NCBI RefSeq assembly: GCF_030684315.1
Contig: NC_081369.1
Coordinates: 9,958,035-10,022,034 of the forward strand
Direction: 5' to 3'
Length of the DNA stretch: 64,000 bases
Origin: Stegostoma tigrinum
Lineage: Eukaryota
Positions 14,727-62,507 of the stretch are shown here, piece by piece. The notes beneath the pieces are model-generated. The model made no database searches, had not been told where the DNA came from, and worked only from the letters and a program-made list of their open reading frames with translations. Position 1 is the stretch's first letter. Every line of letters begins with the position of its first letter. The position numbers and the translations under genes were made by a program.

Positions 14727-14952
14727 TTATGTTTGACCTGCCGATTTTTGTTGACGATGTTACACTTCATTTCAAGATCTGCTGGACAGCACAACAGACA
14801 CAATCTAATCCACTTTCTTTTAGCATGGAACAACAAACATAGGGTGCCAATCGGCATAGCTACGTGTTTCAGTTTAAAGAAATAGTTGACGCTTTGACAG
14901 TGGCAAACCAAACGTGAGACCAGTCAGCCATCAATTCGAGATTTAGCTCGGA

Positions 14953-15213: not shown

Positions 15214-15528
15214 TTGTGGCAATTACTTCCACCAGCTTATCTCAACCTCCCAAAGAGGCAAATATCTTCAGGAATAAAGACACCATCCTCTTCTGCGTCA
15301 TCCCGCTTTCCGTTGACAATTTAGGAGTCATTAGTGGAAATGGGGAGAGAATAAATATCTGTAAAGAGGAGCAGATAGCAGGAAACATATTGGTCTCAAA
15401 AATAAGTGAGGTATTTCTTTTGGATGTGCGAAACGCAACGCTTCATGACGCAGGGCTTTGTAATTGCGTAGTAAGCCTTAAGGGAAAAGCTAGTCAGAAT
15501 GAAACTGGAACCAATCTAACTGTCGGCG
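15214..15528 (+). pseudogene. Degenerate VJ-type V exon, paralog of 46628-46948
   Basis: SQPPKE..LFC...LDVRNATLHDAGLCNC...NETGTNLTV. The middle is homologous only in a shifted frame (*WKWGENKYL*RGADSRKHIGLKNK versus WWKQGKSEYLQDSGDGRKRFGMENK), and that frame has stops. The donor is mutated (G|ggaagt). Confidence 0.8.
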
Positions 15529-18702: not shown

Positions 18703-21700
18703 GGACATAGAATATAGAACAGTCCAGCACAGTACAGGCCCTTCAGCCCACGATGTTGTGCCGACTTATTATTCTACTCTAAGATCAAACGAACCTGTAT
18801 ACCTTACATTATACTATCATCGATGTGCCTATCCAAGAGTGGCTGAAATGTCTCTAATGTATCTGACCTCACTACCACTGCTGGCAGCGTATTCCACGTG
18901 CCCACCACTCTACGTGAAGAACCTACCTCTGACATCTCCTCTATACCTTCCACCAATCATCTTTAAATTATGCCCCCTCGTCATAGTCATTTCCACCATG
19001 GGGGAAAAAATGTTTCTTGCTATTCACTCTATTTATGCCTGTCATCACCTTTAGAATTTTATCAAGTCACCACTCATCCTTCTTCACTCCAATGAAAAAA
19101 AACCCTATCTCCCTCTAACTTTCCACATGAGATTTACTCTCCAGTCCAGGCAGCATCCTGATAAATCTCCTCTGCACCTCTCTAAACCTTCCATATCCTT
19201 CCATTAATGAGGCGACTAGTAGTGAACACAATATTCCAAATATGGTCTAACCTGGGTTTATAGAACTGCAGGATAACTTCATGCAAATGAAAGCCAACAC
19301 ACCATACGCCTTCTTGACAATCCTATCAACTTTGATAGCAACTTTGAGGGATCTATGGACGTGGACCTCAAGATCTCTCTGTTTCTCCACACTGCCAAGA
19401 ATCCCACCATTAGCCCTGTATTCTGCATTCAAATTCGACCTTCCAAAATGAATCACTTCATACTTTTCTGTGTTGAATTCTATAAGCCACTTCTTTGCCC
19501 AGCTCTGCATCTATGTCAATGTCCTGTTGCAACCTACAACAGCTCTCCACGCTATCCACAACTCCACCAAACTTCATATCATCAGCAAACTTTACAAACC
19601 CACCCTTCCACTTTCTCATCCACATCATTTATAAAGATTACAAAGAGCAGAGGTCCCAGGACAGATTCCTGCAGAACACCATTGGTCACTGAGCTCCAGG
19701 CTGAATACTTTCCATCTACTACCACCCTGGGTCTTCGACTTGTCAGCCAATTTTGTATCCAGACAGCCAAATTTCCCTGAATCCTGTCCTTCCTTACTTG
19801 CTGAATGAGCCTACCATAGGGAACCTTACCAAATGCCATGCTAAAACCCGTATACACCATGTCCACTGCCCCGCCATCATCAATGTGTTTTGCCACATCC
19901 TCAGTGAATTCAAAACGGCTTGTGGGGCATGACCTGCTCCTCACAAGGCCATACTGACTATTACTAATCAAACTGAGCTTTTCCAAATAATCATAAATAC
20001 CATCTCTGAAAGTCCTCTCGAATAATTTTCCCATCACAGAAATAAATCTTACTGGGCTGTAATTCTCAGGGTTATCCCTGTTCCCTTTCTTGAACAATGG
20101 AAAGACATTTGCCACCCTCCAATCATCTAGTACTGCTCCAGTGAACAGTGAGGATGCAAAGATAATCCCCAAAGGGCAGAAGCATCTTCCCTCACTTCCC
20201 GTAGAAACTATGAGTATCTCACATCTGCCCAGGGGCTTATCTATCCTTATGTTTGCAATATTTCTAGCACACCCTCCTTCCTAGTATTAACTTTTATGAG
20301 CATATCCGCCTGTTCTATGCTGTCCTCACAAATGTCAAAGTCCCTGTCACTGGTGAATACTGAAGCAAAATATTCATTAAGGACCCCCACCCCCACCTCC
20401 TCTGCCTCCGTGCACAAGTTCCCTCCACTATCACTGATTGGCTCTACCCTCACTCTGGCCATCCTCGTGTTTGTCACATAAGCATAGAATGCCTTGTGCC
20501 TTTCCTTGATCCTACCCACCAAGGATTTTTCATGTTCCCTTTCAGCTCTCCTAAGTTCACCCTTCAGTTCCTTCTATGCTGCCTTGTTGCCCTGTCGAGC
20601 CTGTTCGATCTTAGCTTCCTCAACCTTAAGTAGCTTCCTCAACCTTCCTCTTGACTAGGTGTTCAACATGTCTAGTTATCTATGGTCCCTTCACCCTACC
20701 ATCTCTTCCTTGCTTCAGATGGACAAACCAACCCAGCACTCGTAGCAACTGCTCCCTAAACAATCTCCATATTTCTGTCGTGCATTTCACTGAGAACATC
20801 TCTTCACCATTTATGCTCTGTATTTCTTGCCTAACAGCATTGCAATTCTCCTCCCTCAATGAAGTATTTTCCCAGACCGTCTGCACCTATCCCTCTCGAT
20901 GATATAGTGAAGGTCAGGGAGTTGTGATCATGATAACCAAAATGCTCTCCCACCAAGAGATCTGACACCTAGCCTGGTTCGTTGCCAGGGGCCAAATTCA
21001 ATATAGCCTCCCCTCTGGATGAGCTATCTACATATTGAGTTCGGAGTCCTTCCTGGACACACCTGACGAAATTTGCTCCATCCAAACTATTTGCACTCTG
21101 TAGGTTCCAGTTGATATCAGCGAAGTTGATGTCACCCATGACAACAAACCTATTGCTTCTGTAGCTTTCCACAATCTGCCTCCCAACCTATTCCTCAGAG
21201 TTTCAGTTGCTATTGAGGGGTCTGTAAAAACTCCCAATAATGTGACTGCTCCTTTCCTGTTTCTGACTTGCACCCACTAACTCAGTAGGCAAGCCGTCCT
21301 CAATGACCTCCTTTCTGCAGCTGTGGCACCATCCCCGATGAGCAATACCATTACCCCACTTCTTTTACCTCCGTCCCTCTTTCTTTTGACGTATCTATAC
21401 ACTGGAACATACAATAACCATTTCTATCCCTGTGTTATCCAAGCCTCTGTAATGGCCACAACATCGTAGTTCCAAGGATTAATCCATGCTCTAAGTTCGT
21501 CACCTGATTCCTGACACTTCTTGCATTAAAATAGACACACTTCAACCCATCATACTGACAGCAATTTTGGACAATCAACTGCTTATCCTTCCTCGCAGAC
21601 TCTCTGTGTACTCCATCTACCTGTACACCAGCTATCCCATCCTCTGATCCATAACTCCCGATTCCCATCACCCTGCCAAATTGGTTTAAACCCTCCCGAA

Positions 21701-22040
21701 GAGCTCTAGCAAACCTCCGCCCAGGATATTGGTGTCCCTCCAATTCAGGCACAACCCACTCTCCCTGTACAGCTCCCACCTGCCCCAGAAGGTATCCCAG
21801 TGATTCAAATATCTGAAGCCTTCCTGCCTACACCAGCTCTGTAGCCACCTGTTTATCTGAAATTACGCCCCATTTCTGGCCTCACTAGCCCACGGAACCT
21901 CAAGGGCAATCTATGCTTACGTGCCTGTGGCACTGGTACTAATCCTGAGATTACTACTCTGCTCGTCCTGACTTTTGGCTTCCATCCTAACTCCCTATAT
22001 TCGCTTTTCAGTTCCTCATTCCTTTTCCTCACTATGTCTC
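18703..22040 (-). mobile_element. CR1 LINE, decayed: ORF1 C-terminus, endonuclease, RT (internally deleted), 3' tail
   Basis: RFARALREGLN (ORF1 end), LKCVYFNARS and VVMGDINF (APE), DWRVANVFPLFKKG..NYSPV, GVLQESVLGPLLFVIFIND, and WLIEFNTEK..HFGRSN. Confidence 0.92.
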
Positions 22041-34760: not shown

Positions 34761-35799
34761 CCCATCTCCAAATCAACAGAGCAGAACTCCTATTAAAGAC
34801 CCAGTCTCATCGGATGTGCCTTACTTAATAAATCAAAGAGCTTTTATGCATGAACCAGGCACCTTGTGCCTTTGCAAACTATTTGAAACGCTTGGAGCAG
34901 AAGAATGGGATGCAATTTTGTGTGCAGCACAAGCACCAGCCAAATAGATTGTGTTTATCAAAGATTACTGAAGGCTTTTTGCGTTATCCCTCATTGCATT
35001 ACATTTATAATTAGTTCATCTATGTGTGTTTTTATGTGTGCGAGGGAAATTTTATGAAGGCATTTCACTCTGGCTGCTTAGTGCTTCGGAATCTTCATCC
35101 TCACTTGCAAATAAATATCAGTTAGAGATCTATATATATGGTGGTGCACTTCTGAGACTTTTGCACTCCCCTGTCTGGTCATTCTTAGCGGTAGCCTCAT
35201 ACTTATTTATTCTCAGCTTGCATAGTCCAAGTTGCAGTTGGCTTCTACAAAATGCCTGTTCTGCACATACATCTCAGGAAAACACATGAACCACAGTGAC
35301 GGCAGCTGCTATTCAAGTGCAGAAACTGCAATGCCTGAGCTTCTCTAAACAGTGTTCTAGTGCTGTGAAACATTTAAGGAATAAATTGCCCATGGGGAAA
35401 TTAATCACGTTGACTGCCCTGAAACGTGTACCGATGAATGTTAAAAAGGTAGCACATGTAGATTGTATGAATCATGATTGGATCAATACATTAAGAATTC
35501 AGACATATACATTCTCTTCTAAAGGGTAGTAATAGTGGGTAAGTTGCAATAACGCATGTGAAATGAACTATTTGTTGATGTCAATATTGAGTCATGCTAT
35601 AATTATACTGAAACATGCGATATTATTTCTACTGTTGCTATATACCACAAAGTCGGCTTGCAGCATTTGACAGAATTATTAGCAGTTACATTTAGGACTA
35701 AGTGCTGCATACCGACTTCTGTTTCTGACTTAAAATTTAAAAAAAAAACTATTCACAAAGTACTGATCTTGTAATACCGGGAAGCATAGTAACAGTCGA

Positions 35800-35976
35800 T
35801 AATAAGGTGTAGAGTTGGATGACCACAGCAGGTCAAGCAGCATCTTAGGAGCAGGAAAACTGACGGTTTTGGCCTAGACCCTTCATCAGAAAATGATGCT
35901 GCTTGGCCTGCCGTGTTCATCCAGTTCTAAACCTTGTTATCCCGGATTGTCCAGCATCTGCAGTTCCTACTATCTC
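35800..35976. mobile_element. Inverted-pair short PLE-terminal element (degenerate hammerhead 35862-35889)
   Basis: Same family as 12.8 kb, with an internal inversion. Flanks are taacagtcgat/taacattccat. Confidence 0.75.
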
Positions 35977-36372
35977 TAACATTCCATGTTATCTATTTAT
36001 ATGATTTCCTGGTGTCACAATGGCAGATATTTTTCTGATAAAGAACAACTAACTGCTCATTTCTGTGAGTCAGTACACGAATTCATAGAATTGAGGTGCG
36101 TGTGCCTTATCAATTGTGCACATAGATTGAATGTCGGATGGAAGTAAGCAAGACATAAGTCAATACATGGGTTTCATAATATCAATTGCCAAAGAAATTA
36201 TAAAATGTTGGTTTGTAAGTGAACACCTCTGTTTCGTTTCCTTGGTGTCCTGTGTACCAATCACTTGATAGAGTAGGTAAACATAAATATTACTGCAGTC
36301 AAAAAGTAGAGACGTCTGAATGAATAAATAAATAAGACAGACTTATCTCTAAAATATGTCAAATAAGCAAAT

Positions 36373-36378
36373 TTTATT
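36373..36378 (-). promoter_or_regulatory. Candidate polyadenylation signal AATAAA of the VJ-C1 gene
   Basis: tttatt on the plus strand, about 320 nt downstream of the stop codon. Confidence 0.4.
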
Positions 36379-36699
36379 TTCTGAAAGAAAGCGAACAGAA
36401 AACACGAGTTAACTAATTGAGTATTCCATGATATATACAGGCTATATGCTGGAATCTATCACTGGAATTATTTATCATTTTGGCAGGACATTTTTTCAAG
36501 GCAGAAAAATACTTGAGTAATATGGTAAAGGAATGCAGATTGCTAACTGAACGATTCTTCTTTGTGAAATATATTGGTAAATTCTCGATTTGTTGCATGC
36601 GGGCATACTCTGTTCATTTCAATTTTGTTGTCAGCTGCCCCATAGTCCGTGCCTTTTCTATGAGCATGCAAATTTAAGCGTTGTATAGGTCGTCTTGTC

Positions 36700-36720
36700 T
36701 CAACCTGTTGCTTGCTGAAC
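36700..36720 (-). CDS. Exon 7 coding part: VQQATG-stop (completes AMYGQV)
   Basis: aatcttgcag|GTT CAG CAA GCA ACA GGT TGA. It supplies the Y+3 Val of the second tyrosine motif. Confidence 0.65.
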   Translation of the reverse strand, partial: VQQATG

Positions 36721-39700
36721 CTGCAAGATTAATATTTTGAATTGATGTTAATGAGCCGTTGTCCAAGTCTTGGTAACTATGTTCAGTCACTTAAATTAAG
36801 ATCATGGTGCAAGGGTAAAGTGGGCATAGTCCCTGAAGACTGCTCTCTCATGAGAGGGAGGGGCAACTGATGGTGGCTTAATTTGAGGGTTACCACTTCT
36901 CAGGAGGGTTCAAGATGGTGAGAATTTCATACTCATACTCACTTCAGCCAGTACAATGTTGGTATCCTCAGCATTGCAAACAGGCTGTCCAGCTAACTGA
37001 GCTAAGGAACCCCTGACTTCGGTATAACACACAACCGAACCAATGAGCTTATCACTTTTGCATGATTGTTAATCACAATTGTGATTTTTTTTCTGATCTA
37101 TTTGTCAAGCTTACCTGACCATACATGGCTCTCTCATCGTCCTGATTACTAGTTGGACTTTTTCTGGGTTTTTTCACTTCCACTGCAGTATAATGCACAG
37201 CCTCATCCAATTCTCTCTGAATGGACCAGAAAGGAATAAAATGCTTGGTTATATGGTAACTGTTGGCATCAGCAGTTTGCACACTGCTGAACAAACAGGG
37301 GACAGATTAGGTTCAACTGGAAATGAAGTACAAAAGCTGGAATTCATTCGACTAACATAAACTAAATTCTTAACACAAAGTGGACACTAGAACTAAAATT
37401 TAAACTTGCTCCCTTCTATGTAACAGCACTATTATTTAAAATATCTGTTTCAATGAAAACTCTTGGCACATGGAAAGATACAATTGATCTTTAAAGATTC
37501 CCATCTATGTTCTATTCGCAAAGATAAAGGCAATTTACCTATTAGTTATACAGCATTGTTTGCTTCTAATTCAATGCTTCTAATTCATAAGTGAACATCT
37601 AACCATCGCTTTTAATGGCATATTTTGGTTGGATAAATGTTTTCAATAATTAGAGTTAACGGGATTTTGACATGATTATGAAATAAAATTTCGTGACATT
37701 AAACTTTAGTTACATTTTGAATAGGTCAGAATGAGTGAGTTAACATACCGACTCTTCCCGGTGGGTTGGTCCAGTTAAATAATCTTTATCTATAAATGAA
37801 TAAGATTTAGTGTTGGTTAAGGGATTCCTTATTAAGTCAGTTTACATACCAGTGAATGCAGAGCTAATTGTCAGTCAGAAAAAAAACAAAATAAAAACAA
37901 AGTCTCAAGTTTCACATTGTGCTGGTAGCATTTGAGTTGCCAGCCCTTGGCGAGAAAACACTGTGTGGTGAGGGTATTTTGTTTCTCGCTTAGGTGCTAA
38001 GTGCTTCAAACAGTATGGGGAATTTCCATTGTGGAGATGATTCTGCCCTACTGTGCCCAGAAAGCAGGCTTAAAAGTCTATTCGACCATCTATTCAGTTG
38101 TATTAAGATCTATACAAGTTGGTTAAAGGGGCTTTTTACTCCTCAATTTATACTTATTTTCTCTTCTACACAAAATGTGTGATCATATGTTTGCCAGGGT
38201 ACATTTCATTCATCATGCTGAAAATGGACATTAATAAAAATTGCTTTTTTTTACAGGATGCTGTGCACTCTTGCAATATAGATTGCATTTTAAAACAATT
38301 GAGACCTAATGGATGCAAAAGTAATGTGATTTCCATTATTAAGTAATATTCGAGAGGCTCTCCTAAATCTTGTTCTTAAATCTTTGAATAAAGTCAACGT
38401 TTTGCAAGACTTACAACGATTATTCTGCAGTCGACCTCTCCTCCTAATGACGATTATTGGCACCAGAAAAGTCATTCCAATCACCACACATCCAAGCAAC
38501 CAGAAATAAAGTGAGTTAACGACGTTGTCTACAGAAGTAAGGTGAACATTAATCATAGCCGACTTTAGCAAAACCTAGTATCCAAGATTTATTGTTTTAA
38601 CTAAGGTGCTAACTGTAATAAATCCAATTTGGCCCAGACTAAACGCCCTCAAAAATTTGGCAAGATATTCAAGACCATAACTTAGTCTCATTAAACGGTA
38701 AATTTCAGGCATTTTGTTCCACATGCAACTCGATTAGTCAAACTATTGGATTTCAAGCAAAATGTACTTTATTCATTGGCTATAGTTAAAATAAAACAAA
38801 AGATGGGTGGAATTTAAATAACTTACCCCCACTGGGAAACCTAAGAGAACAATAGATGCACAAACTATTATTCTTTTACTGTTCCAGCATAGCAACATTC
38901 CATCAACACACTCAAAGCAAAAGACAAATTCAGAAAGTTGATTAAAGTCCCACAGTCAGAAGGTAACCCATAACTTTTGGCTGCAGCCAAGAGGAAATAA
39001 AAAACATAGCTTCCACTTTTTCAAGACCTCAACAGCAACTGCTGAATGATAAGACTAAAACTGTTTGTTCTGCGTGAGCTTGACCACGCCCATTCAGGCT
39101 CCTTTTATTTTTCCAACTTGCACAGGCCTGAGAAACTGTTCAAAATCTCTCTGAATAAAAGGCAGCATAAATACTTTAAAGCTACAGCATCATCACAACT
39201 CAACGTTATGAAAGCCATAGCAAAGGGTGTCTATAAATAATAAAATGTGAGGCTGGATGAACACAGCAGGCCAAGCAGCATCTCAGGAGCACAAAAGCTG
39301 ATGTTTCGGGCCTAGACCCTTCATCAGAGAGGTCTGCAGTTCCCATTATCTCCGGTGTCTATAAATATTTTTGATATGATATTTGAACAACCTCTACTTT
39401 TATTGAACATTTTAGATTAATCTGTGCAGTGGAAACTAGCATTTTCAAATGCTATTATAGAACCCTGAAATGAAAAACCATCCGACAACATAAGGCATGT
39501 CCATGTTCTGTATTTGTTTGTCTGTTGGCATATTTGGTGCCATTTTCGCAATAATTTGTGCACTGCTTCCATAGCATTCTATATTTCAGGAGACATATTG
39601 CTGGAGAATCTCTGCAAATCTATGAATCTGTGAATAGAAAACACCACCAACGATTTGACACCAGTGGTCCTTGTTCTGAATTATGTTATTTTTTTCTCCT

Positions 39701-42700
39701 CCGCAAATATTGCCGGATCTGCTGATGCTCTCCAGCGACTGCTGATTTTTTTTCAGATCTCCTGTATTCGCATTTCTTTGTTACATTTTAATCTGGATTT
39801 CCAGAATTGGTTAAATATGTCTTTTCACTTATCTGTGTTTATTTTCTGTGCCTACCACTGAATAGTAAATAGGACCAATGGGTATTCAACTCATTTAGGT
39901 TGTATCTGTGGCGGTAAAGACTTATGAATACAATGAGGTGCAGCACAAACTGCGCTGTAGTCAGCCTGACAGTATATATTTTCATAATATTGTGAAAGAG
40001 AGTTGAGTCAGATACTCTGTAAATGGCTGAAGAGCGAAGTTGGCTGTGGGTCAATTTCAGCACTCTAAATTAGAAGCAGCTGAACTTCATTAGACTACAT
40101 GAGCAAAGGCTGTGATGTAACATAGTACAGTGATCAGACATAATGGCTTAAGATGGGAGTTAAAAGGGGAGCAACTCACGTGTCAACGTGCCTCATGTCA
40201 GTGGCAATGAACAACATTTTATTAACAGAGAAACCTGTTGCCATTGTGACTGAGTAGTTAGCAACACTGTTGCACAGTACCAGGGACCTAGTTTCAATGG
40301 CGGCCTCAGGCAACTGTCTCTATGGAGCTTTCACATTTCCCCCTGTGTCTGCGTGGGTTTCCTTCAGTGACCTGCAAAAACGTGTGGGTTAGGTCGATTG
40401 TCCATGCTAAATTACCAATTGTTTCCAGGGATGCGTAAATTAGGTGGGTGACCCACGGGGGCTACAAGGAGAGGATAGGGGATTAGCCTGGGTGCGTTGC
40501 TCTTCAGAGAGTCAGCATGGGCTCGTTGGGCTGAATGACGTGTTTCCACACTGTAGGCATTCTGAGGAAGAAACTTAGAAACTTTTACTAGAAACATAAG
40601 AGTACATATGTTGGGTTACAGAAATGTAACTACTGATTTAATTGGATGTACAGAATGTCAATATTGGAAACAATGTGAATTATCTGAGAGAATTTAATTG
40701 ACAAGTAACGTAACTTAGATCTAAACATGCCATATTCAGTTTTGAAAATATCAACATATGATTTTAATGCTTTCTAATATATTTCCCATGGCATGTCGTT
40801 ATACTAATGTCTTGAGCATTAATCTGTAAGAAAGTAACAATTAGTATTTTACTGAAAGAGACAGTGACTGTTTCTTCCATTGGCCTCGGACACTCATACC
40901 TTCTTTAAATTTAGTAACAGTATAGGTGACAACAGCTGGGATCTTGAGAGACACGTGAAATACCATACAGGTATAGTTGTCTTCTGCTTGTTTCACGTCA
41001 GCTAAAATGCTGGAAACCTTATATAGTCCATCGGTTCTCTTCTCTATGCTGTTTTGTGCTTCTAATGCAGTTTCAGCGCCATTTTTATACCAAGTTAGGC
41101 TGAGGTTCTGTGGAAAAAATGGTGCTGTTTCACACACAAGATTCAAAGACGCGGATGAATTTCCTTCAAATGGCCTGGAGATAATCTTAAGTGGGGTTGG
41201 TGGAACTGTAAAATAAATAATGCATGAATCAATTTGAGTCATTGGACTCATTTGGAACAAATTTGATTTGTACTTACTTTAAAGTGTTGCTGAAGAAACT
41301 GATTACCTTTCCCTTTAATGTTAAAAGGCCATCTACACCTATATCAAAGACACCGAAATCTGGCCAATGTCCCCGAATTATGAAATATACTCATTGAGTT
41401 ACTCAGTAGACAGAAACATACAATTATTACTATGCAGAATACAGGCGATGCAGGCCATTATACCTACTGGTCAAATTAATATTTCACTCAATGAGAGACA
41501 CCCGTCTTCGGCTGTAATCATGCACATAGTCCTTTTCAGAAAATAGTCTAATTGCCTTTTGAATGATTGTGTTCGTGTCCACATAGATGACAACGACATG
41601 GAAGGAGTAAAAAAAAAGTTCTGCTGAGGGAATATGAGCAGCAAGAATTGCATTAAGAAGCTCCATTAACACGAACTTATAAAGCAATAACCTTCTGAAT
41701 GCTGCCCACATCACAAATGAGCTATCGTACGTTAAATTTGATGAGAACATGATATAAAGGTCTCAAAAATTAATGTATTAGACATACTTTCGGGTCATAA
41801 GACACTGTCACTAGAAATGATGGAAGTGGGAGGAGTAATACTGGGAGCAGCCTTCATCTGAATCATGCCAGTGTCTGTGTTCAGGCGAGTCGTGTCGTGC
41901 TGGGAAATCTTAGGGAACAAGAAGTAATTTGACAATAGAAAACAATGCAAGCGTACATCGTAGCAGGGAAGGGTGTAATGATCAGACAGCAGCAGGAAGG
42001 CGCAGCTTCTGCAAAAGTAGATGCGCATTTGAGTCTGTCGGTTAAGCCACAGGTTTCAAAAATAGAAAAAAGGACTGATCGAAAGGTTCTGTACCTGCAT
42101 GCTATTAACATTCGGTCAAGAACAGACATGCTGATAATGCAAATATAAATAAATATGCCTGACTTGATAGCCGTTTTAGAGACCTGCTTGCAAGGTAATG
42201 AAGTCTTAGATCTGAATATCCAAGAATGCTATATCTTGTGGAAATGATGGAAGTGTAATCTTTTTATTTAAAAAATGGCAATGGTAATGCCGGAAGGGAT
42301 CACGTTGTTTGAACGCTCAAGATGTAGAATTAATTTGAATGCAGCTGAGAAGTTGAAAAGGAATGTCTTGTAGGGGTTGTACACTGACCCACTGTCAGTG
42401 ATCATATTGCAAGTTGTGGTGCATGTAAATATGGTAAAAGGGGCTTGTCTGAAAGATAGTCCAATAACCTGGATTTATTTGGATTTGCATATAGATCGGA
42501 TGAATAAAATTTGCAAAGATAGCCTATCAATTAGTTAATTAAGTATTTATAACTATAGTTCTTCGAATAATATGTTCTGGAGCCAATTAGGCAGCATGTC
42601 ACTTGGCATAAGATAATGTTCAATGGAGTAGAATTTATTAGTAAAATGATAGAGAAGGCATTCTCCAGCAGCAAGAATCATAATAAAATTGAATCTAACA

Positions 42701-45700
42701 TTAATTTTGAAGGGGAAAAATACAATGGATGTAAAAGTTGTGTTTCAAACTTAAATAAGTTCAACTATGGGGGCATTAATCTTTAAAAAAAAGTTTGAAT
42801 GAATACTACAAACGTTATACCATTCAAGGATATGGGACAAATGGAGGAACTCGGCGTTCACAAACTTCAAGTGTGTCGGTTCTGTTGGTAGTTAGACTCG
42901 ATGGGCTGAAGGAAATTTTCTGTGTTATATAAATCTATGTGTCCACGATGACAGACAATGCTAATGTGGAGTGAAAAATTGTGTTACAAGATGTATCAGT
43001 AAAGTTACAATGACTGAAGGAGTACATTCCAGTGAGAACTATTGACTTCAAAGTAGAGAAGGACAGTCCATAATTGACTAAGGAAACTAATCATGGTACA
43101 AACGTGGAAGAAAAAGACCATCATTTCGCAAAGACAAGTGGCAAGTCAGAGGGTTGGTCAGAAAAAAGAACATCGAAAAATACCTAAAATATTCCTGAGG
43201 AATATTAGATAGCAAGACTTTTTTTTACAGGTGTTTAATAAATGATAGGGGCAAGGAAAACGTTGGTCCTTAAAGGAGTATGTCTATGAAATTAATCATG
43301 GATCAAACTGAACTGGTCGATGAAATAAGTGCATATTTTGTGTTATCTTCTCTGCAGAGGAGACAATTAAAATCTCAGAACTGATTACGAATGAGGTGGT
43401 GATATTCGTGGTGAAAAGTAAAGCAATTCATTCACTCAAAAAAGCGTATGGAGAAAATTGATAGATCTAAATCCTAATAATTTCATGTGTTCTAAACAAA
43501 CACATCCCACTGACTTAAAAAGTGGGTATTAAAATAATAGCGACGTATGGTCTTGATTTCTAAAAAATCTCCTGGAGTCTAGGATATCCCCATCAAATTG
43601 GAGAATTGCAAATGGAATTTGTTCATTCAAGAAAATTATGAGAAAGAAAGCAGGAACCTGTTGTCAGATACCTTCAAATCCATCCTGGGGAAAAATGCTT
43701 TTTTATGCTGTATATACCAATGCGTTTATAAAATTCTGTGCTATCAGGCAGATTCAGTATGTTTATTTTTGAAAGACATCCTGTTTGACCAATTTAGTTT
43801 AATTTTATGAAGAAATACCAAGCAAAGTGAATAATGGAGTATCTGTGGATGTATGTACTTAGTTTTCCAAGAGGCATTCAACAAGGTATCAAGTAAAGGA
43901 TTATTGTGCAAAGTAAAATGCTGTTGCAGAGAATAATAACAAGTCAAAAGGGGAATTCTGTAGAAAGCAGAGACTGGACAGCAAGGCAGAAATGGGTCGT
44001 TTTCATGCTTTCACCAAGTAATGAATTTAGTATCACAGAAATTAGAATTTTGGACAAAAAGAAAAGCATATGTTATGTTGATGATTCGTGTGCAGAAAAC
44101 TAACATCTAATTTTAATTTTTTTTGATACAAGGAAAGCTGCAAGATACGTTGTAAAAAAAGAGTCGAGGAAGTGATAACTTAATTCAATGGGCAAAATAT
44201 TGCAAATCGAGTGCAATGTAGCAAAAATATGAGCTTTCACACTTTTGTAGAAAGGATGTCTGAAATATAATTGAATTTATAAGGAAGACATTGCAGATTT
44301 CCCAAATACAGCGTGATATTGTTGGCCTGATACGTGAATCAAACAGAATTAGTATGACACAGTGAGGGCCTGTTTCCGTGCTGCAAATCTCTATGACTCT
44401 ACATGGAAAACAAATGGAATATTATCATTTATTGCAAGGGGAAAATAATATAAAAGCAGAACTGTTCTGCTACATTTGTAAAGAACTTTGATAAGATTCC
44501 ATCCAACGCACACATTTTTTATTTTATTATCCATGAAGGGACAGATGGCTTACAGATAAATTATGAAGGGCATTCTATTGTTACATGAAATGAGGATTTT
44601 TTTTCTGAGGAAAGTTAAGGCATGCTGGGTCTGAATCCATTGGTGAATAAAATAGGATGTGATCCGTTTCAGACATATCAGATCCTGTGAGGGTTTGACA
44701 AGATGGATGCAAAAACGATGCTCCACCTTGGGCAAGAGACTATAACTAGAAGGCAACATTTAAATAGCAGTGACCTTTGCATTATAATGGAGTGAAAGAG
44801 GATTATATTGTCTCCGAGAATCATGAGTTTTTGACACTGCATTCCACAATGAGACATGAAGATTTGTAAAGATTTTAAAGTTAAAGGTAAATGTATTCAT
44901 GACTAACAAGAAAGAAAATTTGATTAGTAGTTGGGAATGTGCAATTGACGCCATCATTAGATCTGTTCCGATAACATTGAATGTCAGAAGAAGCTCAACG
45001 GGCCAAATGGCCTTTTGTCCACCCAAATTTACATGTTCCTTTGAGCTTGTCTCCACTACAATGCCAGATAATGCATTCTGGAACTGAAATATGCATTGCA
45101 CGTACACGTTTCTATCATATAACTTTTATTTATTTCGTCAATTACAAATCTGATTGCCTTGACTTCGATATCTCCACAAATGAGAAATGTTTCTCCCCAG
45201 CAGATTTTGAAAACCTTAATCAAGTATCTGAGTATTCTTTTTCTTTTCCCGTAAAGCCTCCAGCCTATCTTTGTACTTGATATCTGTAGCCATGGAACCA
45301 TTCTCATGTATACTTCCTGCACTCTCTCAAAAATACTCACATCCTTCCAAAAGCACGTAACCTAAAACTAGGCACAATACTGTGTATTTTCTATCTTCTC
45401 TTTATGCTCTATCTTTCAAAATTAATGACTTTATGATTCTTTGCCCTGATCCCCATCTGCCGTTGGCCTGTCACTCCCTGTTTTTGATAGAATAGCTATC
45501 AATTTTGTCTAAAATTAATGATTTAGAAGTCACCCACCATCAATTTTAAATTGACCGATTTGCAGTTATCTTATTTTTAGACCTCATTTGGACAAGAATG
45601 TAATGTTTAAAGCTCCCCAGTTCTTAGTCATCGACCGAGTGTAAGTAAGATGTATGAATTATTGCCAGGGAAGACATAACTTTTACTCTCATATCACTAG

Positions 45701-47532
45701 TAGCCTTGGATGCATGTCAGTCTGTCCTTGCATATTTTAACGCCAAGGGACGGGTAGCCTCCCTAACTTTCACATTCCCCATTAATGGTCAATCATTTTT
45801 TTCTCTTTCACAATAGGTCAAGTTGTTCATTTCTCTGGTAAAGAGAGAAGCAAAATATTTGAATTAGTATCTCATTTACTTCCTGCACCTCTGAGTGAAA
45901 ATTCTTTTCCTGGTCATTAATCTTGTCTGTCTTTTGTGTTTCTTTATAATCATTTGCGCACTTTTGGAATGATTTGAAATTCCAATTTGTGTTAAAACCC
46001 AATCTCTTTTTGCGCTTTCTTTTCTCCTAATGTCAACTTTTTTTACTTTTGCTCTGGAGTTTTTATACTTAGTGTCATTCTCGATTGTATTTACTAACTT
46101 GAATCTGATAGGTCACAACAATTGAAGTCTAATGCTTTTCAAAATTCAAAAACAAAAATAAAACTTGGAAGCAATCCGTGTGCTTCCATATTTCAGGCAC
46201 AGATAGATGATAACGAGGAACCTGCTGTTAAAACCAAAGCCTCCAGATGAGATGAATTTGACAATCAGATTACAACTGGTGAATTACTCATGTGCATTTA
46301 AAGAATAGAGGATTAGACCACATCGTCTTTCAAGTGGCTGTTACGTTGACTTATGACAGGACAACCATGTATGCTTCAGAAAATGGGCTAAGAGTCTGAA
46401 TTTACTGGAAAGACACGAAGACATTTCAGTTCGTCACTTCCTTGAAGTGTGTTCCAGACATTAGCTATTATACCCAAGATTCATACTTTACATTTAGAGT
46501 TCGATTCTAAATGCCTGCATTGAAACGTGTGACATTGAATGCCTACGTAGCTCTTTTGTTTCAAAATATCCTCATTTATGATTGATATGCTCCCCACCAT
46601 TGGGCTGTTCATTTGTTCTGCACTTACCATGAACAATTAGCTTTGACCCTGTTCCATTTCCTTGAATGATTCCGTGACACATCACTGCACAGTAATAGAC
46701 TCCAGCGTCTTGGAAAGTTACATTCAGCAGGCCGAAAGTGCGATACCATTTATTTTCCATACCAAATCGTTTTCTGCCATCGCCACTGTCTTGCAGGTAT
46801 TCAGATTTGCCCTGTTTCCACCAGCGCACGGTAACGCAGGTTACATCTTGGAAGCTAGGAAATCTGCACGCCGAGATGATACTTTCTCCTCTGGTTACAG
46901 TCACTTCTTTGGGTATTTGGGTCACTCTGAACGAAGTGCGGTCTGCAGCTGTCAAGAATTGTGTCAATTACAGGCTAATTATTTTACACATCGTACGTTG
47001 AACTAAGAAAGAAGGGAACGGGCATGGATCGAGCGGAAATAAACCGTAATAAATTGATTTACATAGATATTTACAACGGCTAGCACCCCTCGCTGCCTCT
47101 GAACCAAATGCTCCGCATTGGAGTCAATTCCGCACTTGATGACTAAAGAAGGCGCAATCAAAGATGGCTGTACTTGTTTATCATTAACCCGCAAAATATT
47201 CCAACACGTTTATATCAGGCGCTTAGAGCGGGAGAATTTCCGGCTCAGCCATGATTGAGCTGGACTCGCGCCCCTCAAATTATACCGTCTGACCATCGGC
47301 GGGCGTAGTGTTTGAGGATAAAACCTGTGATTCAAAAATGAACGTAAGACACGGATTTCTATCCCATGGGCCGCTAGACTTGTAAAGATAAAGACAGAGA
47401 AAGCAAAAAACAAATTTACTTCGCTGTTATTTCGGAAGTAGTTCGCAAGTTATCTGGGGTAATCAATAAGAACCTACCTGCGGGAATTATCCTGTGGAGG
47501 ATCAGGCACAAGAGAACCAGACGCACTGACAT
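36700..47532 (-). CDS. Non-rearranging IgSF receptor, L-V(J)-C1-TM-cytoplasmic ITIMs (SIRP-like / NKp30-related VJ-C1 type), 7 exons, 319 aa
   Basis: Exons on the minus strand: 47532-47478, 46948-46628, 41205-40900, 38528-38415, 37789-37749, 37216-37115 and 36720-36700. All introns are GT-AG, with phases 1,1,1,1,0,0. The exons total 960 nt and read open to a TGA. Confidence 0.88.
36815..37015 (-). mobile_element. Decayed tRNA-derived SINE in intron 6
   Basis: The reverse complement begins gggttccttagctcagttagctggacag (A-box-like head). Confidence 0.45.
37115..37216 (-). CDS. Exon 6: cytoplasmic ITIM exon (RELDEAVHYTAVEVKK...ERAMYGQ)
   Basis: Pyrimidine tract followed by cattcag|. Contains VHYTAV (canonical V-x-Y-x-x-V ITIM). 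Donor CAG|gtaagc. Confidence 0.82.
37749..37789 (-). CDS. Exon 5: 41-nt cytoplasmic mini-exon (YKDYLTGPTHREES)
   Basis: ttcatttatag|...|gtatgt. It converts phase 1 to phase 0, exactly as needed to join exon 4 to exon 6. Confidence 0.78.
38415..38528 (-). CDS. Exon 4: transmembrane segment plus basic stop-transfer
   Basis: DNVVNSLYFWLLGCVVIGMTFLVPIIVIRRRGRLQNNR. Acceptor ttctgtag|, donor T|gtaagt. No charged residue in the TM. Confidence 0.88.
38614..39197. mobile_element. Candidate solo LTR in intron 3
   Basis: TGT...ACA termini and similarity to the LTR-like region at 34140-34760 (ctttatt..gttaaa..acaa block). No exact TSD. Confidence 0.45.
39240..39353 (-). mobile_element. Short PLE-terminal hammerhead element in intron 3 of the VJ-C1 gene
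   Basis: Core at 39300-39327 (GAAACAUC variant). Perfect 14-bp TSD ggtgtctataaata at 39226-39239 and 39354-39367. Confidence 0.85.
40245..40565 (+). mobile_element. HE1-type SINE
   Basis: agggacctagtttcaat (B-box remnant), gtgtctgcgtgggtttcc, catgctaaatt and tttccacactgtagg. Confidence 0.8.
40900..41205 (-). CDS. Exon 3: Ig C1-set domain
   Basis: LVCETAPFFPQNLSLTWYKNG...DGLYKVSSIL...YTCMVFHVSL matches the C1 signatures (C-x4-F-x-P..W and YxCxVxH). Acceptor ttttacag|, donor G|gtatga, 306 nt, phase 1-1. Confidence 0.93.
42080..45050 (+). mobile_element. Old, highly decayed CR1 LINE in intron 2 of the VJ-C1 gene
   Basis: VLYLHAINIRS (APE start), WRIAN..LF and QEAFNKV remnants, followed by a CR1-like 3' tail. 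Confidence 0.65.
46628..46948 (-). CDS. Exon 2: Ig V-set domain with J-like G strand
   Basis: Reads VTQIPKEV..C..W..R..L..DAGVYYC..GNGTGSKLIVH. Acceptor ttgacag| (an in-frame alternative ctgcag| would start the exon at 46942), donor G|gtaagt. Confidence 0.93.
47478..47532 (-). CDS. Exon 1: signal peptide MSVRLVLLCLILHRIIPA
   Basis: ATG at 47532, hydrophobic core, and a phase-1 donor CAG|gtaggt, as is typical of IgSF leader exons. Confidence 0.8.
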
Positions 47533-52300: not shown

Positions 52301-53639
52301 TCATAATGATATCAGAACTTTTCACTATCTATCTCACTTCAATTATCATAGTTGTTTTCCACAGTGATTGTGATCTGTTTCACTACTGTATATGTCTCAC
52401 AATGATCTTGACATGCGTGAACCTAGTGATGATATGTTTTAAATTGATCGGAAATTCGTTGGCATTCCTTTCAGTCTGTGAAAATTGATATTGAAGTCTT
52501 TGTTGCTCTTCCTGGAATGCTTCAAAGTGCTGCTCCCTTGCATCACATTCCCCTTTGTTAGCCTAAAATTAATTCTGTTCAGCTTTGAACTTCGCAAGAT
52601 GTGATTGACAGTGATACTGATATACGTCACATTCTTCCTGACCTGATTCATACGATACATAAACTTTCTCATAGCGATGTCGGTGTTCTACTCTGATCTG
52701 CTTCATATCCGTTTTGCATCATAGATAGTGACTCTGAGCTATTTCACACTCCTCTCAGACTGGCTCAGAGTGACCTTGATCTGATTCACTCTGCCCCTGA
52801 GCCTATTGGCAGTCATCCTGATACTTTGCATGCTCTTCAACTGTTAGAAAACATTGATACAGTTAAGAACAGTTTCCTCCTTTACCGCCAAGGCACATAT
52901 GGACGGGGCTGCAGTCACCTGATCGAATCGGCTTTTCCTCAATTCAGAAACAGAAAGCATCAATAAATGATTTCTGATCTCAACCCAGTTCATTAGCTGT
53001 ATAATTTCTATAATCTGTCCTTGCCACACCCGCCCTTTTTCATTCTATTTTACGAGGTCCTTCTGAGTGCTTATCCAAATATTATAAAGATTAGCTACAT
53101 AGACTGCTGAGAAACAACTAAACCTTAATGAAACTGATATCAAAATACTCACTGTCGTGAAACTGTCACACAATTGTCCAATTTCCTGTTCAGGTAAAGT
53201 GAAAATTTCTTCCAACCAAAGAAAAATTTATTTGTGTATATCACATTGTCTATCTCGACATGTCCTTCTTCCCTGGCAAGTGTTTACCATTAATCAGGAA
53301 TGTCAGAACTCGTGTCATATTTGACTTCAAAATCAGGGCATAATACAAAAAGATGTAGGAGTATATGGTGTTCTGCTAATCTCTCAGCATGCTGCCCCAA
53401 TAGGGAAACATTCATCCGGCCTGGGCACGGAAATGATTGTCAGATTGATAACCCTTTCTCGATACTGTGGGTGGCGGTGAATGTCCATTCTCAGTTAGTG
53501 CAGCAATTTGTCTGGTTAATTTCAATAATGAATGAGATTCCCTCACACTAAATAGTTATGCGACCCCCAAGCAGTTTGCATCAAAATTCTTAGAGGTACA
53601 GAATCTTAGCAGTTTGTATATAATGTGAGAAAATGTGAG

Positions 53640-54260
53640 GTCACATGTAATGACCTTTTGAGAGAAGAAATCCCTCATCATCTCAGTTTGAAGTAGGTGA
53701 CTCCTTACTCTGAGTTTATGCCTTCTCCTGAGAGATTCCCATACCAGGGGGAATAACTTTTCTGCCTCAAACAGTCAAGTCCCTAAGAATCTTGTGTTGT
53801 TAGATAATGTCTCCTCTCATTCTTCTGAATGTCAATGAAAATAGGCCCAGCGTACTCAAACTCTCTCCTCATAAACAATTGGATAAGCTACTGAGCCTCC
53901 CTTGGGTTGCCTACAATGTCAATCTATCTTTGCTTTGATAAGGAGTCTAAAACTGCAGTGCTTTGTATAATTTTCGAAAAAGTTTCATGATTTTATGCTC
54001 CATTTCCTTTGCAACAAAGGCCATCATTGAGTTTGTATTTCCCCTAATCACCACTGAACGTAGATGCTCTGTTTTCATGTAAGACGAGTGCCAAACCCAT
54101 GAGTTATGTAGCTTTCTGCGGTGTTTATTTATTTATCTCCTCTTTTCTTTCTACCAAGTGGGTGAACTCACATTTTCTCACATTATATGCAAACCGCTAC
54201 GTTTTGCCCATAGCTTAATCTATCTCTATTTCTCTGCAGACCATCTATAGACCTCATCCC
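53640..54260 (-). mobile_element. Decayed CR1 3' end
   Basis: gagagaagaaatccctcatcatctcagt...ttctgaatgtcaatgaaaataggccc is typical of the CR1 tail in reverse orientation. Confidence 0.5.
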
Positions 54261-56457: not shown

Positions 56458-56613
56458 AGAGATAATGGGAACTGCAGATGCTGGAGAATCCAAGAAAGCA
56501 AAGTGGGAAGCTGGATGAACACAGCAGAGGGTCTAGGCCCGAAACGTCAGCTTTTGTGCTCCTGAGATGCTACTTGGTCTGCTTTGTTCATCCAGCTTCA
56601 CACTTTGTTATCT
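56458..56613. mobile_element. Inverted-pair short PLE-terminal element
   Basis: gataatgggaactgcagatgctggag... is joined to an inverted copy with a half hammerhead (gggtctaggcccgaaacgtc). Flanks are tagtcctttatattc/tagcccattatattc. Confidence 0.8.
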
Positions 56614-62202: not shown

Positions 62203-62507
62203 CCACTGAAGTAACTTCAAACGAAGTAGATCAGTTTTCCAAACTCTTGAAGACCACTGGTGGTAATAATGTTTCCATGTTTTTCACATTTCCCATATTT
62301 GAAGATGCTCCTGAAGTATTTTGGTGGAATGCAGTGCAGAATTGTTTCTGGAACTCGACAGCAGATATCTGTTTGATGGACAGAAAGCAAGGAGATCACT
62401 TCATGTTCTCAATATCACTGTTGCAGACTCCGGAATATATTATTGTAATACAAAGCTTCAGTAAACTAATAACGGAGCTAGGAGTGGATTGCTGTTGAAT
62501 GTGTGTG
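62203..62507 (+). pseudogene. Degenerate VJ-type V exon, second paralog
   Basis: Acceptor ctcatag|. VDQFSK..GNNVSMFFTFP..VFWW has the B-strand Cys replaced by Phe. After a frameshift it continues ..DSRYLF..SLHVLNITVADSGIYYC..*..LLLNV. The donor is mutated (G|ttaagt). Confidence 0.78.

What the first reader, a model, noticed from the sequence alone, without database searches (positions are those of the whole stretch)
36700..47532. Intact non-rearranging V(J)-C1 inhibitory receptor with antigen-receptor-like architecture
Seen in sequence: seven phase-compatible GT-AG exons give a 319-aa type I protein, L / VJ / C1 / TM / cytoplasmic tail. The J-like strand (GNGTGSKLIVH) is in the same exon as V, and I saw no RSS or separate J segments. 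Established knowledge: C1-set domains are largely limited to Ig, TCR, MHC, b2m, tapasin, SIRP and B7H6-like proteins, and VJ-joined V domains occur in NKp30 and SIRP. Inference: the ectodomain looks like a light chain or TCR chain but is fixed in the germline and wired to inhibitory motifs. That makes it a candidate member of a poorly described chondrichthyan family of NK/myeloid receptors resembling the pre-RAG antigen-receptor ancestor.
Basis: partly seen in the sequence, partly recalled or inferred. Interest (0 to 1): 0.85.

Follow-up and report, generated by a model that had tools for sequence, protein, structure and literature searches.

The report
Shark SIRP-like V-C1 inhibitory receptor gene
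This is a real seven-exon shark gene for a cell-surface receptor with one variable-like domain, one constant C1 domain and an inhibitory tail. It is one copy of a large SIRP-alpha-like family found in sharks, rays and chimaeras, not a unique antigen-receptor relic, and its tail is cut short.

Summary
Seven GT-AG, phase-compatible minus-strand exons (47532-36700) give a 319-aa protein: leader / V with a J-like strand in the same exon / C1-set domain / TM / ITIM tail. No RSS lies near the V exon.

The gene is one member of a multigene family in at least 12 chondrichthyan species. About 59 family proteins were retrieved with the same V-C1 layout. NCBI pipelines name them inconsistently, mostly [quoted passage not shown] (SIRP-alpha-like). 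The closest relatives are 55-60% identical.

All 27 invariant or near-invariant family residues are kept. The C1 exon's best solved matches are SIRP-alpha and SIRP-gamma domain 3. Family tails align across four tyrosine motifs with a lungfish SIRP-alpha-like tail (z up to 12). The C1 tree cannot decide between SIRP, MHC and Ig affinity.

New here: the tail ends early. The stop codon sits where long-tailed relatives continue, and remnants of tyrosine motifs 3 and 4 lie just downstream, broken by further stops and a frameshift. One canonical ITIM (VHYTAV) and a second tyrosine remain.

No RNA runs exist, so expression is untested. The scan has already noted at least eight similar genes in this genome. 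Verdict: a new member of a known kind, of moderate interest. The "pre-RAG ancestor" reading is neither supported nor excluded.

The parts
47478..47532 (-). Exon 1: start codon and most of the signal peptide (MSVRLVLLCLILHRIIPA plus 1 nt). The leader is split and the intron is phase 1.
   Evidence: The donor is GTAGGT. It resembles the N-terminus of Heptranchias P0164 (MSASMVFLCLTLRGII), which is weak on its own.
46628..46948 (-). Exon 2: V-set domain with the J-like G strand (GNGTGSKLIVH) in the same exon. It has the canonical Cys/Trp/DxGxYxC residues plus an extra Cys pair (VTCVTV, AVMCHG).
   Evidence: Pfam V-set 5.4e-6. It is 52-58% identical to family V domains. The AF2 model has pLDDT 91 and is a V-type fold without clear C'/C'' strands; its top structural hits are CD79b, VNAR, Ig V and NKp30. 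No RSS was found.
40900..41205 (-). Exon 3: C1-set domain (PPTPLKI...YTCMVFHVSL...).
   Evidence: Pfam C1-set 7.5e-11. The best PDB matches are SIRP-alpha d3 (3.5e-15) and SIRP-gamma d3 (8e-14). It meets the C1-set sequence criteria of Hatherley 2009: FFP in the BC loop, 13 residues between Cys and Trp, and MVFH = xVxH after the F-strand Cys. The AF2 model has pLDDT 83 and its top hits are MHC II beta2 and beta2-microglobulin.
38415..38528 (-). Exon 4: short stalk, transmembrane helix (LYFWLLGCVVIGMTFLVPIIVI, no charged residue) and a basic stop-transfer stretch (RRRGRLQNNR).
   Evidence: It is about 60% identical to family TM exons.
37749..37789 (-). Exon 5: membrane-proximal cytoplasmic piece (KDYLTGPTHREES).
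   Evidence: It aligns with GPTRHEEL of the relatives.
37115..37216 (-). Exon 6: cytoplasmic piece with the canonical ITIM VHYTAV (37181-37198) and a second tyrosine (AMYGQ|V, completed by exon 7), 24 residues apart.
   Evidence: It aligns with EIVHYAALDLSKARKTPR..EERTVYAQ of P0164 and P0013 (1e-4 to 5e-4).
36700..36720 (-). Exon 7: last six codons (VQQATG) and the TGA stop at 36702-36700. In long-tailed relatives the tail continues past this point (..GAARDKLTYATL..).
   Evidence: In two samples, DNA contigs covering 35954-39261 are identical to the window, so the stop is not an assembly slip.
36593..36699 (-). Relic of the lost distal tail. The motif-3 remnant DKTTYTTLKF (36699-36670) is in frame with the stop and is followed by a second stop (TAG, 36660-36658). 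The motif-4 remnant TEYARMQ (36613-36593) is in another frame, directly after a further stop.
   Evidence: The frame-0 read-through (stops as X) against the P0164 tail scores 50, z 6.7, 0 of 500 shuffles. The motif-4 remnant was recognised by eye and is not significant on its own.
36373..36378 (-). Candidate polyadenylation signal AATAAA, about 320 nt after the stop.
   Evidence: Read from the sequence. This is inference only, with no RNA data.

Best explanation
The locus is a real gene for a type I membrane protein, probably under selection. It belongs to a chondrichthyan-wide multigene family of non-rearranging V(J)-C1 receptors whose nearest characterised relatives are the signal-regulatory proteins (SIRP-alpha type).

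Shown: the exon model, the V-set and C1-set domains, family membership, retention of every family-conserved residue, an uncharged TM helix, and a tail with one canonical ITIM (VHYTAV) plus a second tyrosine 24 residues later.

Also shown: the tail is a shortened version of the family's four-to-five-tyrosine tail. It ends at a stop codon that has decayed remnants of tyrosine motifs 3 and 4 behind it.

Inferred mechanism, by analogy with SIRP-alpha: the membrane-distal V domain binds a ligand through its CDR-like loops, and the single C1 domain acts as a stalk. After engagement, Src-family kinases phosphorylate the tail tyrosines, which recruit SHP-1/SHP-2-type phosphatases and dampen activation of the leukocyte that carries the receptor. 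With two tyrosines instead of four or five, signalling is probably weaker or qualitatively different. The ligand, cell type and expression are unknown.
For: Gene model. Domains: Pfam, the C1-set criteria of PMC2785349 read on the sequence, and AF2 plus Foldseek.

Family: 190 library hits at E<=1e-10. Fifty-nine retrieved proteins have the V-C layout and score 95-154 bits on the family C1 HMM, against 55 bits or less for everything else. The family forms a 99/99* clade, and the window C1 sits in a 99/92* subclade with Heptranchias, Heterodontus, Mustelus, Scyliorhinus, Stegostoma and Mobula members.

Conservation: all 13 invariant and 14 near-invariant family positions are kept.

SIRP link: the best solved matches of the C1 exon are SIRP-alpha and SIRP-gamma d3. 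The nearest non-chondrichthyan hits are lungfish, coelacanth and pig SIRP-like proteins. Family tails align with the lungfish SIRP-alpha-like tail of P0136 across four Tyr motifs (Smith-Waterman score 94, z 12, 0 of 1000 shuffles).

Selection argument: about 36 codons behind the stop carry two further stops and a frame change, while the 319 codons in front carry none.

DNA: contigs from two samples confirm the sequence.
Against: No RNA run exists for this organism in the tools, so transcription and the splice junctions are untested. The window C1 has a long terminal branch (0.31 against 0.03-0.3 for the other subclade members). The other family copies in the window are decayed. Both facts fit a birth-and-death cluster in which this copy could also be dying.

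The SIRP link is not proven. The C1 tree does not resolve it: family+SIRP gives p-AU 0.46 and family+MHC gives 0.51. With a family C1 profile, the best single domain score goes to an Ig lambda constant domain (50.6 bits). ITIM-type motifs are similar in many unrelated receptors, so part of the tail match could be convergence, and no control tails were available.

The second tyrosine (AMYGQV) fits neither the ITIM nor the ITSM consensus.
Confidence: 0.65

Rival explanations
1. The copy is a silent or dying member of a birth-and-death cluster. The ORF is still open by chance, the truncated tail is the first step of decay, and the gene makes no functional receptor.
For: Tail motifs 3 and 4 are lost to a stop codon. 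Three other family copies in the same 64 kb are clearly decayed. The C1 terminal branch is long. There is no RNA evidence.
Against: The 319 codons have no lesion, while about 36 codons behind the stop carry two more stops and a frameshift. All 27 conserved family positions are kept, and all six introns keep GT-AG. Short-tailed family members are also annotated in another species (P0165, 326 aa, ending shortly after motif 2), so a short tail need not mean loss of function.
Confidence: 0.2
2. The family is not a SIRP relative. It is an independent antigen-receptor-like lineage: either a survivor of the pre-RAG V(J)-C1 precursor or a derivative of a germline-joined shark Ig/TCR-type gene that later gained a TM exon and an ITIM tail.
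For: The L / VJ / C1 exon layout with a split leader is that of antigen-receptor genes. The whole-family profile matches UrIg2 (4e-33) and Ig chains as well as SIRP-alpha (3.5e-29). The best single-domain score of the C1 profile is an Ig lambda constant domain. The V domain's closest solved sequences include an scFv and a shark VNAR. The protein atlas's first lead is a cluster named 'putative antigen receptor (fragment)'. The C1 tree leaves this open.
Against: With the window's own C1 exon, SIRP-alpha and SIRP-gamma d3 lead by about five orders of magnitude in E-value. The tail is collinear with a SIRP-alpha-type tail. No extracellular membrane-proximal cysteine for an interchain bond is present (sequence). 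There is no RSS trace. Hatherley et al. note that even for SIRP the direction, precursor or derivative, cannot be decided.
Confidence: 0.15

Closest known systems
SIRP-alpha / SHPS-1 (PTPNS1) and the SIRP family of bony vertebrates
   Same: Both have an N-terminal V-set domain with a GxG J-like strand in one exon, followed by C1-set domain(s), an uncharged TM helix and a tail with ITIM-type tyrosines. The best solved matches of the C1 exon are SIRP-alpha and SIRP-gamma d3. Family tails are collinear with a lungfish SIRP-alpha-like tail over four Tyr motifs. NCBI pipelines name most members SIRP-alpha-like. From memory, not checked here: the mouse SHPS-1 gene has the same exon plan (leader, V, C1, C1, TM, three cytoplasmic exons), with one more C1 exon.
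   Different: There is one C1 domain, not two. The family is large, fast-evolving and multigene, with no one-to-one orthology. The V domain is short, without clear C'/C'' strands. This copy keeps only the first two of the four tail tyrosines. Sister-group status with SIRP is not resolved by the C1 tree. No CD47-type ligand has been tested.
UrIg / UrIg2 (non-rearranging elasmobranch VJ-C genes; PMC12227049)
   Same: Both have a germline VJ exon with a split leader followed by C1-type domains in cartilaginous fish. The family profile matches the UrIg2 structure 9dmx (4e-33 for the whole chain).
   Different: UrIg2 has three unique C domains plus duplicates, giving 9-11 C domains in sharks. It forms disulfide-linked dimers and is a single MHC- or AgRC-linked gene, and the paper reports no ITIM. 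The per-domain score of the family C1 profile on UrIg2 C1 is only 33 bits. The window gene has one C1 domain, an ITIM tail and many paralogues.
PRARP (chicken and other non-mammalian bony vertebrates) and NKp30/NCR3
   Same: Both have a non-rearranging V domain with a J-like GxG strand. PRARPs carry an ITIM (from my recollection of Fu et al. 2019).
   Different: PMC10751288 lists PRARP and NKp30 as 'VJ genes', in contrast to the 'VJ-C1' gene UrIg, so they lack the C1 domain that defines this family. No PRARP sequence was available for a direct comparison.
NITR (teleost novel immune-type receptors)
   Same: Both are multigene families of V(J)-containing, mostly ITIM-bearing receptors in clusters that evolve by birth and death (established knowledge).
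   Different: The second NITR domain, where present, is not C1-set, and NITRs are known only from bony fish (from memory). No sequence test was done here.

Membership tests
Chondrichthyan V(J)-C1 'SIRP-alpha-like' family (database-annotated, unnamed in the literature) | Collinear L / V(J) / C1 / TM / tail architecture | tested here: met
   Six of the seven exons align in order with P0164, P0165, P0163 and P0012; the 6-residue last exon was covered only by the read-through alignment. Fifty-nine retrieved proteins share the V-C layout.
Chondrichthyan V(J)-C1 'SIRP-alpha-like' family (database-annotated, unnamed in the literature) | Family-conserved residues (13 invariant and 14 near-invariant columns of alignment A1, including GNGTGS..L.V and PPTPLK) | tested here: met
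   All 27 are present in the window gene.
Chondrichthyan V(J)-C1 'SIRP-alpha-like' family (database-annotated, unnamed in the literature) | C1 domain falls inside the family clade | tested here: met
   The family clade has 99/99* support and the window sits in a 99/92* subclade. It scores 125.8 bits on the family HMM, against 55 bits or less for non-members.
Chondrichthyan V(J)-C1 'SIRP-alpha-like' family (database-annotated, unnamed in the literature) | Full tail with four to five tyrosine motifs (xxYAxLxL, TVYAQ, LTYATLxL, TEYAELQ, xxYSEA) | tested here: not met
   Only motifs 1 and 2 are encoded. Motifs 3 and 4 survive as broken remnants behind the stop. Tail length also varies among annotated members, for example P0165, P0163 and P0170.
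IgSF C1-set domain | (F/Y)(F/Y/H)P at the BC loop; 13 residues between the B-strand Cys and C-strand Trp; xVxH after the F-strand Cys (Hatherley 2009) | tested here: met
   The sequence has FFP, C-ETAPFFPQNLSLT-W (13 residues) and C-MVFH. Pfam C1-set scores 7.5e-11. The structural neighbours are MHC II beta2 and beta2-microglobulin.
SIRP family (SIRP-alpha type) | V-set domain followed by C1-set domains, with closest sequence similarity to SIRP C1 domains | tested here: inconclusive
   The single-sequence PDB search puts SIRP-alpha and SIRP-gamma d3 first. Lungfish, coelacanth and pig SIRP-like proteins are the best-scoring named non-family proteins. However, the profile's best single domain is Ig lambda C, the tree is unresolved, and the AU test rejects neither a SIRP nor an MHC grouping.
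SIRP family (SIRP-alpha type) | Three extracellular domains (V-C1-C1) | tested here: not met
   There is one C1 exon, and no further Ig-like exon lies in the introns. The skate member with two C1 domains (P0003) has a recent internal duplicate.
SIRP family (SIRP-alpha type) | Cytoplasmic tail with four tyrosines in ITIM-type motifs that bind SHP-1/SHP-2 | tested here: inconclusive
   Family tails are collinear with the lungfish SIRP-alpha-like tail (z 6-12). The window copy keeps two of the four. Convergence of ITIM motifs is not excluded, and phosphatase binding cannot be tested here.
SIRP family (SIRP-alpha type) | Conserved synteny with the SIRPA region, and CD47 as ligand | not testable with these tools
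Rearranging antigen receptors (Ig/TCR) | Separate V and J segments flanked by RSS | tested here: not met
   V and J-like parts form one exon. There is no heptamer at the V exon, and the window-wide count is at chance level.
PRARP | Single VJ domain without a C1 domain (as grouped in PMC10751288); bony vertebrates other than mammals | tested here: not met
   A C1-set domain is present. PRARP is listed among 'VJ genes', in contrast to VJ-C1 genes. No PRARP sequence was on hand, so sequence affinity of the V domain was not tested.
UrIg/UrIg2 | VJ plus three or more C domains; single-copy; MHC- or AgRC-linked | tested here: not met
   The window gene has one C1 domain, belongs to a multigene family and has an ITIM tail. 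Linkage was not testable.

The most novel reading that the evidence does not exclude
The chondrichthyan V(J)-C1-ITIM family, with its minimal one-V, one-C1 'half antigen receptor' ectodomain and SIRP-alpha-type tail, keeps the architecture of the common ancestor of SIRPs and rearranging antigen receptors. That would make it a lineage older than the RAG invasion rather than a derivative of SIRP or of germline-joined Ig genes. SIRP-type inhibitory signalling would then be the original wiring of the V-C1 module.
Probability: 0.12. Interest if true: 0.85.

Novelty: new member of a known kind. Interest (0 to 1): 0.42.

Why it matters
C1-set domains are almost confined to molecules of adaptive immunity, and V(J)-C1 genes that do not rearrange are the main candidates for what antigen receptors looked like before the RAG transposon arrived. 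This work shows three things. Sharks, rays and chimaeras carry a large family of such genes. Its closest characterised kin are the SIRPs, by C1 similarity and by a collinear four-tyrosine tail. Public annotation scatters the family under unrelated names: SIRP-alpha-like, tapasin-related, CD276, Ig lambda-like and MHC class II-like.

This pushes SIRP-type receptors back to the base of jawed vertebrates and gives comparative immunologists a defined family to name and test. This particular copy adds a case of tail shortening with the rest of the gene conserved, which suggests that signalling strength is tuned within the family. It is not a unique locus, because the scan has met the family repeatedly in this genome.

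Tried and rejected
1. RNA evidence. The look-up of sequencing runs listed only four DNA runs (one study, two samples) and no RNA run. Read laying therefore could only confirm the DNA, including the stop codon.

2. A tail-only database search (P0041 residues 266-368) found only two chimaera proteins among 41 candidates. The search is word-limited, so this blank says nothing.

3. A V-exon search in the 5.8-billion-protein set had no candidate sharing enough 5-mers. This blank also says nothing.

5. The C1 phylogeny was meant to decide between SIRP, Ig and MHC affinity. The deep nodes are open, and the AU tests reject neither family+SIRP (p 0.46) nor family+MHC (p 0.51).

6. Whole-chain profile scores against the PDB are inflated by multi-domain chains, so I rejected them as a ranking. 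Only per-domain scores were used.

7. A 14-nt candidate mini-exon (38840-38827) between the C1 and TM exons was rejected because it would break the frame (read by eye).

8. Membership of PRARP, UrIg and NITR was considered and rejected on architecture.

9. Literature searches for a description of SIRP-like genes in cartilaginous fish found none. A search for the mouse SHPS-1 gene structure paper also failed, so that comparison rests on memory.

Every search and fold used single exons by reference. Exon peptides were only laid side by side on the family alignment in a script.

Full report
THE OBSERVATION

On the minus strand, seven exons run from the ATG at 47532 to the TGA at 36702-36700:
- L, 47532-47478
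- V(J), 46948-46628
- C1, 41205-40900
- TM, 38528-38415
- three cytoplasmic exons, 37789-37749, 37216-37115 and 36720-36700

All introns are GT..AG. The phases fit (the Ig-type exons are phase 1), and the sum is 960 nt, or 319 aa. Pfam calls the second exon V-set (5.4e-6) and the third C1-set (7.5e-11). The strand GNGTGSKLIVH, which contains a GxG(S/T)xLxV J-type motif, ends the V exon directly before its donor site. No RSS heptamer lies at the V exon, and the window-wide count is at chance level (7 against 8.8 expected). A six-frame scan with family HMMs finds no further Ig-like exon in the 5.4-kb V-C1 intron.

WHAT IT BELONGS TO

I searched the C1 exon alone against 1.84 billion representative proteins. 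It has 620 hits at E<=0.001 and 190 at E<=1e-10. Among the retrieved proteins, 59 have exactly one V and one C1 domain. These score 95-154 bits on a family C1 HMM, while everything else scores 55 bits or less.

The named members come from these species:
- Callorhinchus milii
- Heptranchias perlo
- Heterodontus francisci
- Mustelus asterias
- Scyliorhinus canicula and S. torazame
- Stegostoma tigrinum
- Mobula hypostoma and M. birostris
- Hemitrygon akajei
- Pristis pectinata
- Amblyraja radiata
- Narcine bancroftii

The family therefore spans sharks, rays, skates and chimaeras. The automatic names are inconsistent. Most are 'tyrosine-protein phosphatase non-receptor type substrate 1-like' (SIRP-alpha-like). 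Others are 'signal-regulatory protein beta-1-like', 'tapasin-related protein-like', 'CD276 antigen homolog', 'immunoglobulin lambda-1 light chain-like', 'H-2 class II ... beta chain-like', 'NCR3 ligand 1-like' and 'uncharacterized'.

The window gene is 52-60% identical to its best relatives in V, C1 and TM, so none of these species is the source, or the copy has no close orthologue among them. In a maximum-likelihood tree of 81 C1 domains the family is a 99/99* clade. The window's domain lies in a 99/92* subclade with Heptranchias, Heterodontus, Mustelus, Scyliorhinus, Stegostoma and one Mobula member. All 13 invariant and 14 near-invariant positions of a 25-protein family alignment are kept in the window gene.

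I searched and folded the gene exon by exon, by reference. The joined 319-aa product was deliberately never sent to a search or a fold.

THE DOMAINS

The C1 exon meets the sequence criteria that Hatherley et al. used for C1-set domains. It has FFP at the BC loop, exactly 13 residues between the B-strand Cys and the C-strand Trp, and MVFH (xVxH) after the F-strand Cys. An AlphaFold model built on family sequences (pLDDT 83) has seven strands, and its best structural neighbours are MHC class II beta2 and beta2-microglobulin.

The V exon folds with pLDDT 91 into a V-type sandwich with little C'/C'' structure. Its neighbours are CD79b, shark VNAR, Ig and TCR V domains and NKp30, all at similar scores. 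By sequence, its best solved matches are an scFv, a shark VNAR, mouse SIRP-alpha V and CD79b, at 1e-5 to 1e-3. The V domain alone does not say which family it comes from.

The TM helix has no charged residue. The only cysteine after the C1 domain lies inside the membrane, so nothing suggests a disulfide-linked dimer of the Ig/TCR kind.

Long-tailed family members carry four or five tyrosine motifs in a fixed order:
- motif 1: xxYA(A/T)LDL
- motif 2: EERTVYAQ
- motif 3: LTYATLxL
- motif 4: TEYAELQ
- often a fifth: xxYSEA

The window gene encodes motif 1 as a canonical ITIM (VHYTAV) and motif 2 as AMYGQV, then stops.

Laid against Heptranchias P0164, the last exon reads QVQQATG*DKTTYTTLKFACS*KR where the relative has QNKQGAARDKLTYATLALTGSVKR. 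The read-through, with X at the stops, scores z 6.7 against shuffles. A remnant of motif 4 (TEYARMQ) follows in another frame, directly after a further stop. It was recognised by eye and is not significant alone.

The ancestral tail was therefore cut after motif 2. The cut-off part has since gathered two more stops and a frame change within about 36 codons, while the 319 codons before it have none. This contrast is my main argument that the shortened gene stayed under selection after the truncation. It is an inference, not a measurement.

Short tails also occur among annotated relatives (P0165, 326 aa). DNA contigs from four runs (two samples, one study) cover 35954-39261 with no difference from the window, so the stop is real in the DNA, though these may be the assembly's own data.

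RELATION TO SIRP

Three lines point to SIRP.
1. With the window's own C1 exon, SIRP-alpha d3 (3.5e-15) and SIRP-gamma d3 (8e-14) lead the solved structures, ahead of IgM (1.5e-10) and UrIg2 (6e-10).
2. The best-scoring named proteins outside the family are lungfish, coelacanth and pig SIRP-like proteins. The margin over MHC class I alpha3 and unnamed amphibian multi-C1 proteins is small.
3. The tails of family members align collinearly over all four tyrosine motifs with the tail of lungfish P0136. The Smith-Waterman score is 94 against a shuffle mean of 30, z 12, with z 6-7.5 for five other members. P0136's C1 domains sit in the pig and coelacanth SIRP clade in my tree.

Three points count against a firm assignment.
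1. The deep nodes of the C1 tree are open. The AU test rejects neither family+SIRP (p 0.46) nor family+MHC (p 0.51).
2. A family C1 profile gives its best single-domain score to an Ig lambda constant domain (50.6 bits).
3. ITIM-type motifs resemble each other in many receptor families, so part of the tail match could be convergence. I had no control tails.

The family also has one C1 domain where SIRPs have two. The one skate protein with two has a recent internal duplicate. I therefore file the gene as 'SIRP-like', not as an orthologue of SIRPA.

OTHER CANDIDATES

UrIg and UrIg2 have three or more C domains, form dimers and are single genes linked to the MHC or the antigen-receptor complex, and no ITIM is reported for them.

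PRARP and NKp30 are listed in PMC10751288 as 'VJ genes', in contrast to VJ-C1 genes, so they lack the C1 domain. An earlier follow-up in this scan called a similar gene on another piece a PRARP counterpart. My evidence does not support that for this copy, though I had no PRARP sequence to compare.

Whether the family precedes or descends from rearranging receptors cannot be decided here. Hatherley et al. say the same of SIRP.

HOW IT LIKELY WORKS (INFERENCE)

The protein is probably a type I receptor on leukocytes. Its V domain binds a ligand through its CDR-like loops, and its C1 domain acts as a stalk. After tyrosine phosphorylation of VHYTAV, and perhaps of the second tyrosine 24 residues on, the tail would recruit SHP-1/SHP-2-type phosphatases.

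Some family members have an arginine at the start of the TM helix, with or without a short tail (P0170, P0029, P0058). This hints at paired activating forms, as with SIRP-beta. I did not follow it up.

CONTEXT

The window holds no other recognisable gene. It does hold three decayed family copies and retrotransposon fragments. The scan's notes list at least eight similar genes in this genome, some within 11-160 kb beyond the window's end and others megabases away or on other pieces. These are leads only. I found no paper that describes the family.

VERDICT

The gene is a new member of a known kind: SIRP-like inhibitory IgSF receptors, in the chondrichthyan one-C1 form. It has a shortened tail. 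Interest is moderate. The family as a whole deserves a proper description, but this single copy adds little beyond the tail truncation.

Noticed in passing
window 15225-15524 (+) and 16265-16453 (+): A decayed family copy on the plus strand. The V-like exon is still open but degenerate (35 bits on the family V HMM, with J-like GTNLTV). It is followed about 0.7 kb later by C1-like pieces split over two frames.
   Followed up: partly
window 62211-62458 (+): A V-like exon of the same family, split by a frameshift (27 and 25 bits in two frames), near the window's end. The scan's notes place another seven-exon family gene 11 kb beyond the end.
   Followed up: partly
window 994-1301 (-): V-like fragments of the family in two frames (tblastn 9e-10; HMM 17 bits). 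This is probably another pseudogene at the window's start.
   Followed up: partly
window 53426-53657 (+): A 232-nt fragment matching eukaryotic small-subunit rRNA (Rfam RF01960, 76 bits, model positions 1229-1474), far from any rDNA context. It is probably an inserted rRNA fragment.
   Followed up: no
window 35700-36100 and 39100-39500 (also about 56480-56600): A very high-copy interspersed repeat, with summed contig depth 1e5-1e6 against about 10-30 for unique sequence in the DNA runs. It shares a core that reads ..GATGAAGGGTCTAGGCC..GCTCCT.AGATGCTGC..CCTGCTGTG.. and looks SINE-like. Two copies lie inside or just after the gene (one in the intron between C1 and TM, one in the 3' flank).
   Followed up: no
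window 12800-14900 (-) and 19200-21800 (-): Long ORFs with reverse-transcriptase-like sequence (LINE fragments) lie between the family copies.
   Followed up: no
family proteins P0170, P0029, P0058, P0082, P0108 (alignment A1): A subset of family members has an arginine at the outer end of the TM helix, and several of these have short tails without ITIMs. These may be activating partners of the inhibitory forms, as SIRP-beta is to SIRP-alpha.
   Followed up: no
window 46628-46948 (-), V exon: Two extra cysteines (in VTCVTV after the B-C loop and in AVMCHG in the CDR3-like loop) that most relatives lack. In the AF2 model the region between strands C and D has almost no C'/C'' strand, and shark VNAR domains are among the top structural hits.
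   Followed up: partly
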